A stretch of DNA of 64,000 nucleotides from NCBI GenBank assembly GCA_028534125.1, contig CM052852.1, forward strand, positions 96,844,001 to 96,908,000, read 5' to 3'. How positions within the stretch are numbered: position 1 is the stretch's first letter; each line of letters begins with the position of its first letter. Shown in pieces: positions 54,703 to 62,479 of this stretch. The stretch is from Lama glama. Its lineage: Eukaryota. The translations under genes were made by a program, and so were the position numbers. The notes below the pieces were generated by a model that worked only from the letters and a program-made list of their open reading frames with translations, was not told the DNA's origin and did not search any database.

Positions 54703-54873
54703 ATGAAGAGTGTGCTGCTCCCCGTCCTGGCTCTCTGGGTGGGGTGCTGCCCTGGAGGGGCCCTGGCCAAGCAGGGGCTGAGCCTGAGAGACCCCAGGCC
54801 CCGGCCATCCTCCTCGGGTTTGCCCACCCTGCAGCCGCCGCCGCCCAGCCCGCCGGGCCCCCCCCCCTCGATG
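54703..54873 (+). CDS. ECMX: ECMX coding exon 1 (signal peptide, Pro-rich)
   Basis: gccATGA; hydrophobic leader; donor ATG|gtgagt; ends in phase 0 whereas the next exon needs phase 1. Confidence 0.7.
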
Positions 54874-57800
54874 GTGAGTAGGTTGCACCAGCAGGAAGAG
54901 GCTGGTGGGAGGGGAACAGCCTGGGGCTGGGCCAGAGGGAGAGAAAGCTGGTCATCCTGAGGCTGCCCACCGATACCCATGTCGGTTGCTCAGGTCAGGG
55001 CTGGGAGGGATCCACAGGCCTCAGGGAACCCTTTCCAGAGGGTGAGGGGGTATTGCAGACTCGGAGGCTTCGTGCTCATTGCCTAGGGTAGGAGCAGGGG
55101 AGGGGAGAAGCTCCCCTAGGAGGGGCTGCCTCAGCTGGGGCTGGAAGAACAGATCCAGGTTTGCTGGCTGCCCTAAGGCCTACTGAGGGGACCCAGAGAT
55201 GCGTGGGAGACCGGAAGTCGGGGCCTGGGGCTGCGGTTGGGTGAGGTGGCACAAGGGGCTCCAGGAGAATGGCTACAGGGTCACCCTGGTCTCAAATGCC
55301 TTTGGTTAACAGCATGCATGGTGGCCCCGCCCCAGGCCCAGGGTTGGAGTGGGAGGGGCCAGTGGGTGGGCCTGGGTGAGGTGATCCCCCACCCGCTGCA
55401 GACAGCAGGACCTGCAGGGAAGGCCCACAGTTAGTGCTGATTGAGGAAGGGTACCATGCAGAGGAGGCCAGGCCCTGGAGCTATCACCCCTCCTTGGCCG
55501 TTGCTGACAGCCCCTCAAGGTGACCCCTGGGCTCAACTCGACCCCAGTAGCCTCATCTCCCTGCAGGCACTGGGGCTTCCACCTCCAAAAGCAAACTGTG
55601 CCAGGTGGCAGGGACCCCTTCGTCTCCCCAGAGGCTTCCCCAACCCCTTCCTGCCCAGGAAGAATACACCGGGGACTGGGAGGCACAGGAGCAGGCCCAG
55701 CCCCCTCCATCTAGGGCCACTGAAGCGCTCCTGGACCCACCCTTGTGAGCCAGGAACCTGCCTGTGCCCTGTCACAATGAGCCTAGAAGGTCCCCAGAAG
55801 TTCTGAGAGGCAAGCAGGGTGACTCCGCGTGCTTCTGGCATTGAGCAGCCCCCTGTTCTCCCTTTCTGGCGCTCGGGGTCTCCCACTCTGGAGCCATGAA
55901 AAAGCAGGGCAGAGACCAGGGACTCTCTGACACTTGGTGACCTCAGGGGTCAGTAACAGAAGGCTCCTGAGGAGAGAAGAAAGAGGCAGAAGTGAGGTCT
56001 GGGCAAAGAGGCAAGGAGGGAGGTGGGCCAGCCTATGGCTGATCCCCCCACTCAGGATGGAGGTGCTGTCTTTTAGCCGTGAGGGGATCCCAGTCACCCC
56101 AGCCCACATTGGCTCCTTCTGCAGGTCAAGTTTGGCCCATCCCCAAGAGCGACGGCCCGGACAAGCCTGAGGACAGGCAGCTGGACGGATCACAGTCGCA
56201 GCTCACCTCCAAGGAGGGAGTCCACAGAGCCCCCACCCGGTTCCCAGCCCCCAGTTGGAAGGCCCCTGCCAGGCCAAGGCTGGCCCAGAGGAAGGCGACA
56301 CCATCAGCTGCCTGGGAGCAGGAGTGGGGTCCCAACAACAGGCCAGGCACCGTGCAGGTCGATCCCCAGGCCACAGCAGCACCTGGGGCTGGGGCAGCGA
56401 GGCCCAAAGCTGCCAAGCTCAGGCCCTTGCAGACCAGCAGGGCTCCCCGAGCACAGGAAGGGGCAGTGGCCACCAAGGAGGGCCATGACAGGAAGGCAGG
56501 AGGCTGGGAAGCCAGGGAAAGGGGCCCAAAGCCCGGGAGGCCCCCCAAAGGTGAGGACTGGCTGGGGCAGGCGGCCCCCAGATAGGGCCTGCAATGGGTA
56601 ATGGGGCCATACTCGAGTCTGAAGGGGCCAAGGCGTGTGCCAACCTCCACCAGTCAGCAGCCACTGAGACCCCACCCTGCTCTCCATGTGCCCAGGCTGA
56701 GCACCCCCACGTGCCTGGCACGAGGGGAATCTTCAAGGATAGATCCCCTTCCCCCTGCTTAGGGTCCCAATTTGGACCTAGCCTTTGCTCTTGGTGCCAA
56801 AGGAAAGGGGTCAAACCCAGTGGCCTGTTGTTCCAGCTCAGCTGGCCGGGTCACCAGCAGGTCCAGGGAGCCCAGGCAAGCCCCTGCCCCTCAGTGGGCT
56901 CCTGCTGCTACGTGACCAGGCTGGGGTCTCGGCTCTCGTCCCCCAGAGGCCTCCCACCAACCTGACCTGGGCAGCTGGCGTCAAAAGAAGGTTCAAAGCC
57001 AAGGCCAAGGTGGCAGCCACACCTCAGAGACTACAGGTCATGGACGGAAAAGGCCTGGAAGCAAGCGAGGACACAGCCATGGTTTTGCAGACCTGGGCAC
57101 TGCGGAACAGCCCACGCCGTCCCTGCCAGCCTCCTGCCTCCTGGCCCAGGCGGCCATTGCCTGTGGCAACGTCAAGATGAAGCATGTCCCTGCCCTGTCC
57201 GACCCCAGCCTGACCACGCTCTACTTGGCAGGTGGGTGGCCCCTCTTCACTGCACCCATTCCTGCAGCAGAGGTGAAAAGGCCCCCCTTGAGTGGGTCCT
57301 CGGCCACCCCACCGTGCCTGGGGATGGCTCACCTCCCACTGGGTCCAGGTTGGCAGTGAGAAGAGGCCCTGACCTGCTGCCCCTGGCCCATGTGGGGAAG
57401 TACAGAGTGACAGAGGGGAGGGGGATGGAGGGGCACGGAAAATGGCTTCCCCATGTGTGCACAGAGAATGAAATTGCCAAGATCTCGGCCCACACGTTCC
57501 TGGGACTGCCCAATCTGGAGTGGCTGGACTTGAGCAAGAACAAGCTGGATGCCCGCGGCCTGCACCCTCATGCCTTCAAGGTGCGCCCCAGGCCCTCCAC
57601 CCCCCCTCTCCCAGGGGGCTGGGCCAGGAGCGGGGCCAGCAGTTCCCATGGTTCCAGGCAACCACTACTCCTCTCCCCACTCGGCCTGGGCGCTGTGCAG
57701 AAATCCAGCACGGGGCCAGGGGGCTGGGGGCTTCAACGATTTGGAGTGACATGGTCTACAGCTGGGAACACAGGGAACAACACAGATCCTTGAGCCCCAC

Positions 57801-62262: not shown

Positions 62263-62473
62263 CCCCCAAAAGCCAACCTTCCCCACCCCCTGTTCCTTGG
62301 GGACTGGTAGGGGGAGGAGGGCCCAAGCTCAGCTCCATTTGATCTTTGCATCACTGGGAGAAAGATCTAGAAGACCCTGCTGCTTCAGATGCGCCTACAT
62401 CCCACTGACTGCTGAGGTCCCTTCACTTAGTAAATGACCCAGCCGGATGTGGTGCTGGTTTGGACTTGAGCAT

Positions 62474-62479
62474 AATAAA
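62474..62479 (+). terminator. ECMX: ECMX polyadenylation signal AATAAA
   Basis: AATAAA 212 nt after the stop codon. Confidence 0.7.

What the first reader, a model, noticed from the sequence alone, without database searches (positions are those of the whole stretch)
54703..62479. Near-complete ECMX gene: an almost uncharacterised secreted SLRP-family ECM2 paralog upstream of BGN
Seen: nine coding exons with canonical splice sites, a signal peptide, a C-x8-C cap, a full LRR array, a two-Cys LRRCE cap and AATAAA; exons 2-9 have no stop or frameshift. Known: ECM2 lies in the ECM2-ASPN-OMD-OGN SLRP cluster, and an X-linked paralog (ECMX) lies next to BGN and is a pseudogene in human. Inference: this lineage retains, or only very recently lost, a functional matrix protein with essentially no described function. 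This is the strongest candidate for undescribed biology in the window.
Basis: partly seen in the sequence, partly recalled or inferred. Interest (0 to 1): 0.8.

Follow-up and report, generated by a model that had tools for sequence, protein, structure and literature searches.

The report
Camelid ECMX gene, first exon out-of-frame
This stretch is the llama/alpaca-lineage copy of ECMX, a known but functionally unstudied secreted leucine-rich-repeat matrix protein gene; eight of its nine exons are intact, but the first exon does not join the second in frame, so the gene may be freshly broken.

Summary
Window 54703-62479 (+) carries nine GT-AG exons. They encode a signal peptide, a basic proline-rich region, a two-Cys N-cap, 15 LRRs, the two-Cys LRRCE cap and an acidic tail, followed by AATAAA.

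It is the ECMX orthologue. Exon peptides are 97-100% identical to an alpaca 'extracellular matrix protein 2-like' model and 93-97% identical to camel models. TREX2 lies upstream, as expected for this X-linked region.

ECMX was described in 2008, sits in the SLRP nomenclature, is annotated in dozens of mammals including camelids, and is ECMXP (a pseudogene) in human. The gene is therefore already known; only its function is not.

The local point of interest is exon 1. At the donor conserved in all orthologues it ends in phase 0, but exons 2-9 need phase 1. The extra bases sit at a C10 run. A donor 4 nt downstream, or one more C, would restore the frame.

In the LRR domain the llama/alpaca lineage has 12-13 derived residue changes against 3-4 in camels, several at near-invariant sites. 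I lean (about 55%) towards a very young or ongoing loss and give about 42% to an intact gene.

The scan holds a separate note (s1-855336) on the exon 1 phase problem.

The parts
54703..54873 (+). Exon 1: ATG, signal peptide and a proline-rich stretch, ending at the donor conserved in orthologues (GT at 54874-54875). It ends in phase 0, but exon 2 needs phase 1.
   Evidence: The first 55 residues are 100% identical to alpaca model P0197 and 93% identical to camel models. The start MKS.. is shared with bat, horse, cattle, hippo and dog.
54858..54867 (+). C10 homopolymer where the reading frame departs from all other orthologues. They read ..GPP(D/N/E)-G-QV..; the window reads ..GPPPSM.
54874..54883 (+). 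Tandem donors. The conserved site is ATG|GTGAGT (6/9 consensus matches). A second GT lies 4 nt downstream, TGA|GTAGGT (5/9). Using it makes exon 1 175 nt long (phase 1) and restores the frame.
   Evidence: The idea was also noted in s1-855336. Actual usage was not tested.
56125..56550 (+). Exon 2: basic Pro/Ala/Arg/Lys-rich, low-complexity region (net charge +12) with no Pfam domain.
   Evidence: It is 94% identical to dromedary and 60% to bat.
56947..57231 (+).
57465..57580 (+). Exon 4: LRR II-III
   Evidence: Pfam LRR_8 E=3e-08; 97% identical to alpaca and camel
57988..58120 (+). Exon 5: LRR IV-V
58325..58482 (+). Exon 6: LRR VI-VII
58969..59108 (+). Exon 7: LRR VIII-IX, with the only N-x-S/T sequon left (NRS)
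61223..61549 (+). Exon 8: LRR X to XIV (start of the 'ear' repeat)
   Evidence: Pfam LRR_8 E=4.9e-23; first half of the LRRCE pattern matched
62070..62262 (+). Exon 9: rest of the LRRCE cap (two Cys), acidic tail and TAG stop
   Evidence: Second half of the LRRCE pattern matched; 100% identical to alpaca and 95% to camel
62263..62479 (+). 3' UTR ending in AATAAA (62474-62479)

Best explanation
The stretch is the ECMX orthologue of a South American camelid (llama/alpaca lineage, Lamini). I put that identity at about 0.97.

Where ECMX is intact, it encodes a secreted, probably glycosaminoglycan-free small leucine-rich repeat protein. It has a signal peptide, a roughly 230-residue basic disordered N-terminal region, a two-Cys N-cap, 15 LRRs forming a curved solenoid, the SLRP-specific LRRCE 'ear' cap and a short acidic tail.

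By inference from its closest structural relatives (biglycan, decorin, osteomodulin, fibromodulin), the concave LRR face would bind fibrillar collagen or growth factors. The basic N-terminus could bind anionic matrix such as heparan sulphate, as in PRELP. None of this is shown.

In this genome exons 2-9, all splice sites and the poly(A) signal are intact. Exon 1, however, has gained bases at a C10 run and no longer joins exon 2 in frame at the donor used by every other orthologue. Splicing there gives a 276-codon frame with a premature stop in exon 3 and no LRR domain.

I judge it somewhat more likely than not that the gene in this lineage is a very young unitary pseudogene, or is evolving under relaxed constraint. 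That would parallel human ECMXP.
For: Identity:
- Exon-by-exon BLASTP gives 97-100% identity to alpaca P0197 and 93-97% to Camelus P0187/P0188, all named 'extracellular matrix protein 2-like'.
- The repeats match horse ECMX in Table 3 of PMC2637281.
- The LRRCE regular expression of that paper is met.
- TREX2 lies upstream.
- An AF2 model of the whale orthologue's LRR domain (pLDDT 91.5) has biglycan, decorin and osteomodulin as its top Foldseek hits.

Lesion:
- E1 is 171 nt long, while E2's conserved frame needs one carried base.
- Orthologues read GPP(D/N/E)-G-QV at this junction.
- The alpaca model departs from the camel model right after GPPP. It uses an extra 19-codon exon and skips about two thirds of exon 2.

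Relaxed constraint:
- Over 354 LRR-domain sites polarised with 19 eutherian outgroups, Lamini has 12-13 derived changes against 3-4 in Camelus (binomial p 0.035-0.049). Several hit sites conserved in 95-100% of eutherians.
- In the fast-evolving N-terminal region the counts are 7 against 6.
- The window and the alpaca model differ at 7 of about 541 residues.
- The gene has been lost elsewhere: human ECMXP and a degenerate elephant-seal model, P0026.
Against: - About 1.78 kb of exons 2-9 has no stop or indel. All 16 splice sites, all four cap cysteines, every LRR hallmark and the AATAAA are kept. This argues against a long period of neutrality.
- One more C in the C10 run would give an in-frame GPPPLDG junction, and homopolymer miscounts are a common assembly error.
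- The downstream tandem donor also restores the frame (5 extra nt + 4 nt = 3 codons).
- The contrast between the LRR and N-terminal counts is not significant (Fisher p=0.26).
- No synonymous sites could be counted.
Confidence: 0.55

Rival explanations
1. The gene is intact and functional in this lineage. Either the C10 run is an assembly miscount (true C11, giving an in-frame two-codon insertion), or the donor 4 nt downstream is the one used. In the second case a 5-nt gain is compensated by a 4-nt donor shift, adding three residues in a disordered region.
For: Exons 2-9, the splice sites, the caps and the poly(A) signal are all intact. Camels keep a conventional full-length model. The arithmetic of both rescues works. 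Four runs listed as RNA (one a guess) hold part of the stretch. The derived substitutions avoid the Leu/Asn/Cys framework positions.
Against: The alpaca model also fails to join exon 1 to exon 2 conventionally. The conserved donor (GTGAGT with G at -1) looks stronger than the downstream one. There is a roughly 3:1 excess of derived changes in the LRR domain, including near-invariant sites.
Confidence: 0.42
2. It is not ECMX but ECM2 itself or another SLRP paralogue (asporin, biglycan or podocan-like).
For: Database names are 'extracellular matrix protein 2-like', and two orthologues are named 'podocan-like'.
Against: No VWC domain was found in exons 1-3. The window has 15 LRRs with the ECMX repeat sequences of PMC2637281. 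The best hits are the ECMX clade from marsupials to gar, including an Anolis gene named ecmx. The X-linked neighbour TREX2 is present rather than the ASPN/OMD/OGN cluster.
Confidence: 0.02
3. It is a chance run of open frames in GC-rich DNA, not a gene.
For: The region is 60-64% GC and has many spurious ORFs on both strands.
Against: There is 93-100% exon-wise identity to annotated orthologues, with matching exon limits, and significant LRR Pfam hits.
Confidence: 0.01

Closest known systems
ECMX (extracellular matrix protein X; 'ECM2-like, X-linked'), class A/I SLRP (Park et al. 2008, PMC2637281; Iozzo & Schaefer 2015, PMC4859157)
   Same: It has the same 15-LRR array, with near-identical repeat sequences to horse ECMX. 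It shares the two-Cys N-cap, the LRRCE cap and the acidic tail. Its signal-peptide exon is conserved, and its genomic neighbourhood matches (TREX2 upstream).
   Different: Exon 1 is out of phase with exon 2 at the conserved donor. Several Lamini-specific replacements fall at sites that are otherwise near-invariant. The N-L-T sequon at the exon 4/5 border, conserved in other vertebrates examined, reads T-L-T in all camelids.
ECM2 (chromosome 9 cluster ECM2-ASPN-OMD-OGN)
   Same: It is the sister paralogue, with the same LRR number and cap types. Database names for ECMX derive from it.
   Different: ECM2, and the amphibian and fish ECMX copies, carry a VWC domain (PF00093). The amniote ECMX copies, including this one, show none. 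The chromosomal neighbours also differ.
Biglycan and decorin core proteins (PDB 2ft3, 1xcd)
   Same: These are the top structural matches of the orthologue model (Foldseek E about 1e-15). They share the LRRCE ear cap.
   Different: They have 12 LRRs rather than 15 and a four-Cys N-cap rather than C-x8-C. They carry GAG attachment sites at the N-terminus, whereas ECMX has a long basic disordered region. Sequence identity is about 26%.
Human ECMXP (unitary pseudogene)
   Same: It is the same locus type, a transcribed relic next to BGN. It shows that the gene is dispensable in some mammals.
   Different: The human copy is recognised as a pseudogene. The copy here has a single candidate lesion, and its status is open.

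Membership tests
Canonical SLRP (LRRCE-bearing) | The LRRCE PROSITE-style pattern of Park et al. [quoted passage not shown] | tested here: met
   The pattern was tested in two halves without joining exons. The E8 tail matches the first 11 positions. The E9 head matches the rest, including both Cys. The split codon falls on an X position (pattern text).
Canonical SLRP (LRRCE-bearing) | A curved LRR solenoid most similar to solved SLRP cores, with a long penultimate repeat | tested here: met
   The AF2 model of whale orthologue P0185 (89-93% identical to the camelid models in alignment A1) has pLDDT 91.5 and pTM 0.90. Strand spacing is 23 then 29 residues at the C-terminal end. The top Foldseek hits are biglycan, decorin and osteomodulin. 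This was tested on an orthologue, not on the window's own joined protein.
ECMX | 15 LRRs with the ECMX repeat sequences and a two-Cys N-cap | tested here: met
   Hallmark motifs were found in E4-E8. The repeats compare closely with horse ECMX Table 3. The cap cysteines are invariant in a 47-sequence alignment.
ECMX | Orthology: the closest relatives are ECMX-clade proteins | tested here: met
   Identity is 93-100% to camelid models. Identity falls with phylogenetic distance through other eutherians and more distant vertebrates; the clade in the database search runs from marsupials to gar.
ECMX | Position immediately upstream of BGN | tested here: inconclusive
   BGN is not within the window. 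TREX2 (E=3.9e-135 to PDB TREX2) and a C2H2 zinc-finger ORF lie upstream, consistent with the known X-linked neighbourhood from my own knowledge of the human map.
ECMX (as a functional gene) | An uninterrupted reading frame from the signal peptide through the LRRCE cap | tested here: not met
   With the conserved donor, exon 1 ends in phase 0 but exon 2 needs phase 1. The frame is met only if the +4 donor is used or the C run is miscounted.
ECMX (as a functional gene) | Spliced transcript and purifying selection in this lineage | not testable with these tools
Only protein-level relative rates were possible.
ECM2 | VWC domain N-terminal to the LRRs | tested here: not met
   There is no Pfam hit in exons 1-3. 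PF00093 is listed only for amphibian and fish relatives.

The most novel reading that the evidence does not exclude
In llamas and alpacas ECMX is kept functional by compensatory evolution. A 5-nt gain at the end of exon 1 would be neutralised by an obligatory shift to the tandem donor 4 nt downstream, adding three residues to the disordered N-terminus. That would be a natural case of a frameshift rescued by a splice-site shift in an otherwise conserved matrix gene.
Probability: 0.12. Interest if true: 0.45.

Novelty: already known. Interest (0 to 1): 0.22.

Why it matters
ECMX is one of the few SLRPs with no experimental function, and it has been lost in some lineages; the literature read here records loss in human, birds and cartilaginous fishes. 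A lineage caught at the moment of loss, or rescued by a donor shift, helps date when and where the gene became dispensable. For this window, though, the gene itself is an annotated, described family member. The finding mainly corrects the annotation picture for camelids rather than opening new biology.

Tried and rejected
- **Read laying.** Nothing was laid, so I have no read evidence on the C run, on splicing or on expression.
- **The look-up of encoding contigs.** I therefore had no camel or alpaca DNA, no codon alignment and no dN/dS.
- **Metagenome pattern scan for the exon 1 3' end with a variable C run.** It returned 0 hits.
- **Word search with exon 2, hoping for cDNA-derived ORF fragments spanning the E1-E2 junction.** It found only three proteins, at 60-64% identity and not camelid.
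- **Exon 9 alone against PDB sequences.** Nothing significant; the cap was tested by pattern and by fold instead.
- **Rfam on the whole window.** No match.
- **Alpaca model's extra exon (window 55754-55809).** I considered it as a rescue here and rejected it: with this window's exon 1 length it does not restore the frame.
- **Short ENA/Logan ORF fragments (P0012 cluster, 332 contigs).** I did not follow these up, because they may come from human host DNA.
- **Joined model.** The spliced model was never joined. All searches were run exon by exon by reference, and the structure was predicted for a database orthologue.

Full report
**What is there**

Reading 54400-64000 and translating candidate exons in all frames gives nine exons on the + strand:
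- E1 54703-54873
- E2 56125-56550
- E3 56947-57231
- E4 57465-57580
- E5 57988-58120
- E6 58325-58482
- E7 58969-59108
- E8 61223-61549
- E9 62070-62262 (TAG)

AATAAA lies at 62474-62479. All eight introns are GT-AG, with 13-18 pyrimidines in the 20 bases before each acceptor. Exons 2-9 are in phase with one another and carry no stop or frameshift. Pfam finds LRR_8/LRR_1 in E4-E8 (E8: 4.9e-23) and nothing in E1-E3 or E9.

**What it is**

Because a spliced model was not to be joined, I searched exon by exon.
- Exon 8 against the 1.84-billion-protein representative set returned full-length relatives. The source databases name them 'extracellular matrix protein 2-like' in marsupials, monotremes, lizards and frogs.
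- A word search seeded with the marsupial protein listed the clade from marsupials to gar. It includes many eutherians: bats, horse, hippo, whale, deer, cattle, sheep, camels, alpaca, canids, elephant, armadillo, rabbit, chinchilla and kangaroo rat. An Anolis gene in the list is named ecmx.
- Local BLASTP of each exon peptide puts the window closest to an alpaca model (P0197). Identity is 100% in E1, E3, E6, E7 and E9, and 97-98% in E4, E5 and E8. Next come Camelus ferus and C. dromedarius at 93-97%.

The genome is therefore a South American camelid. I cannot say which one.

The repeats match horse ECMX as printed in Table 3 of Park et al. 2008 (PMC2637281). That paper defined ECMX as the ECM2-like SLRP upstream of BGN on the X chromosome. 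ECMX is listed in the SLRP nomenclature as a poorly studied class I member (PMC4859157). [quoted passage not shown]

Upstream in the window lie TREX2 (19687-20541, minus strand, E=3.9e-135 to solved TREX2) and a C2H2 zinc-finger ORF. This fits the expected X-linked neighbourhood. BGN itself is beyond the window's end.

**Family tests**

- The LRRCE pattern published by Park et al. (text) is satisfied. I tested it in two halves, on the E8 tail and the E9 head.
- The N-cap has two cysteines eight residues apart. These, and the two LRRCE cysteines, are invariant in a 47-sequence alignment.
- I predicted the structure of a database orthologue that consists of the LRR domain only (beaked whale P0185), using that alignment. 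The model has pLDDT 91.5 and pTM 0.90. It shows about 16 regularly spaced short strands and a 29-residue penultimate repeat.
- Its best Foldseek matches in the PDB are biglycan, decorin and osteomodulin, with fibromodulin close behind.

No VWC domain is present. In the precomputed Pfam column, VWC occurs only in amphibian and fish relatives, so amniote ECMX has apparently lost it.

**How it probably works (inferred, not shown)**

The predicted protein has these features:
- a secreted signal peptide;
- a basic, Pro/Ala/Arg/Lys-rich disordered region of about 230 residues (net charge +12 in E2 and +4 in the first part of E3);
- a 15-LRR solenoid with SLRP caps;
- a short acidic tail.

There is no RGD, no acidic Ser-Gly GAG site, and one N-x-S/T sequon. 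By analogy with its structural neighbours, the concave face would bind collagen or growth factors. The basic N-terminus could bind polyanions, as in PRELP.

Expression hints from the literature are cartilage-type. Human ESTs came from osteoarthritic cartilage and chondrosarcoma. ECMXP is up-regulated in stroma-rich chordoma in the same gene list as COMP and MATN3.

**The defect**

Every other orthologue ends exon 1 as ..G-P-P-(D/N/E) plus one carried G, which with the first two bases of exon 2 gives Gly, followed by Q-V. The window keeps that donor (ATG|GTGAGT at 54873|54874). Between the Gly codon and the donor, however, it has a C10 run (54858-54867) plus extra bases. As a result exon 1 is 171 nt and carries 0 bases, while exon 2's conserved frame needs 1.

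Splicing at the conserved donor gives a frame that stays open through exon 2 and stops in exon 3, at codon 276 and before the LRRs.

Two things would restore the frame:
- a GT four bases downstream (TGA|GTAGGT, 5/9 consensus matches against 6/9 for the conserved site), which the scan's note s1-855336 also proposed;
- one more C in the run.

The alpaca database model also leaves the camel pattern immediately after G-P-P-P. It inserts 19 codons that map to 55754-55809 in intron 1 and skips about two thirds of exon 2. This suggests the annotation pipeline could not join exons 1 and 2 conventionally in that assembly either. In this window that extra exon would not restore the frame.

**Constraint**

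Without orthologous DNA I could only compare proteins.

- Changes shared by window and alpaca only: 9.
- Window-private changes: 2-3.
- Camelus-only changes: 3-4.
- Overall this is 12-13 against 3-4 (binomial p 0.035-0.049).

Several Lamini changes hit positions conserved in 95-100% of eutherians and in most deeper vertebrates. Examples are Pro to His in the tail, Thr to Asn inside the LRRCE cap, Arg to Gln and Asp to Asn in E7, and Pro to Ser in E4.

In the fast-evolving N-terminal region the two lineages are balanced (7 against 6), which argues against a simple rate difference. The contrast between the two regions is not significant, however (Fisher p=0.26).

The window and the alpaca model differ at 7 of about 541 residues. 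If the alpaca is the 'organism D' (31-mer share 0.83, about 0.6% divergence), that is close to the neutral expectation. This rests on an unverified assumption and on the quality of an older model.

Against long neutrality, 1.78 kb of coding sequence has no stop or indel, and no splice site or cap residue is lost.

**Verdict**

The identity is settled and already known. The functional state in this lineage is open. I give about 55% to a very young or ongoing loss and about 42% to an intact gene (an assembly miscount or use of the +4 donor).

**Limits**

I worked beside those places afterwards.
- A metagenome pattern scan and an exon 2 word search gave nothing useful.
- The joined spliced protein was never built or searched.

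Noticed in passing
window 19687-20541 (-): A single-exon ORF encodes TREX2 (three prime repair exonuclease 2). It scores E=3.9e-135 to solved TREX2 chains and has a Pfam RNase_T hit.
   Followed up: partly
window 5620-6891 (+): A long ORF carries at least 9 tandem C2H2 zinc fingers (zf-C2H2 E=2.8e-58). It is probably the terminal exon of a KRAB-type or ZFP92-like zinc-finger gene.
   Followed up: no
window 35549-35717 and 36291-36471: Two runs of N (169 and 181 bases) sit in an AT-rich part of the window (GC 0.35-0.42). 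I left them as they are.
   Followed up: no
window 57578-57996 (exon 4/5 border) and orthologues P0181, P0189, P0004: The N-L-T glycosylation sequon at the exon 4/5 border is conserved in the other vertebrates examined, down to zebrafish. In the window, alpaca and both camels it reads T-L-T, a loss on the camelid stem.
   Followed up: partly
proteins (Pfam column): The VWC domain (PF00093) is listed for amphibian, lungfish, coelacanth, gar, bichir and many teleost ECMX-clade proteins. It is listed for no mammal or squamate, so amniote ECMX seems to have swapped the VWC module for a basic disordered region.
   Followed up: partly
protein P0026 (Mirounga angustirostris, 361 aa): The elephant-seal 'ECM2-like' model keeps the signal-peptide exon. 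It skips exon 2, lacks several LRRs and runs into intron-like sequence in place of the last exon. This may be an independent decay of ECMX in a pinniped.
   Followed up: no
window 59540-59970 (intron 7): By eye, this stretch looks like an old interspersed repeat. It has long spurious ORFs on both strands.
   Followed up: no
window 55754-55809 (intron 1): This 56-nt segment has an AG acceptor and a GC donor. It matches the 19 extra codons of the alpaca database model. It does not restore the frame with this window's exon 1.
   Followed up: partly
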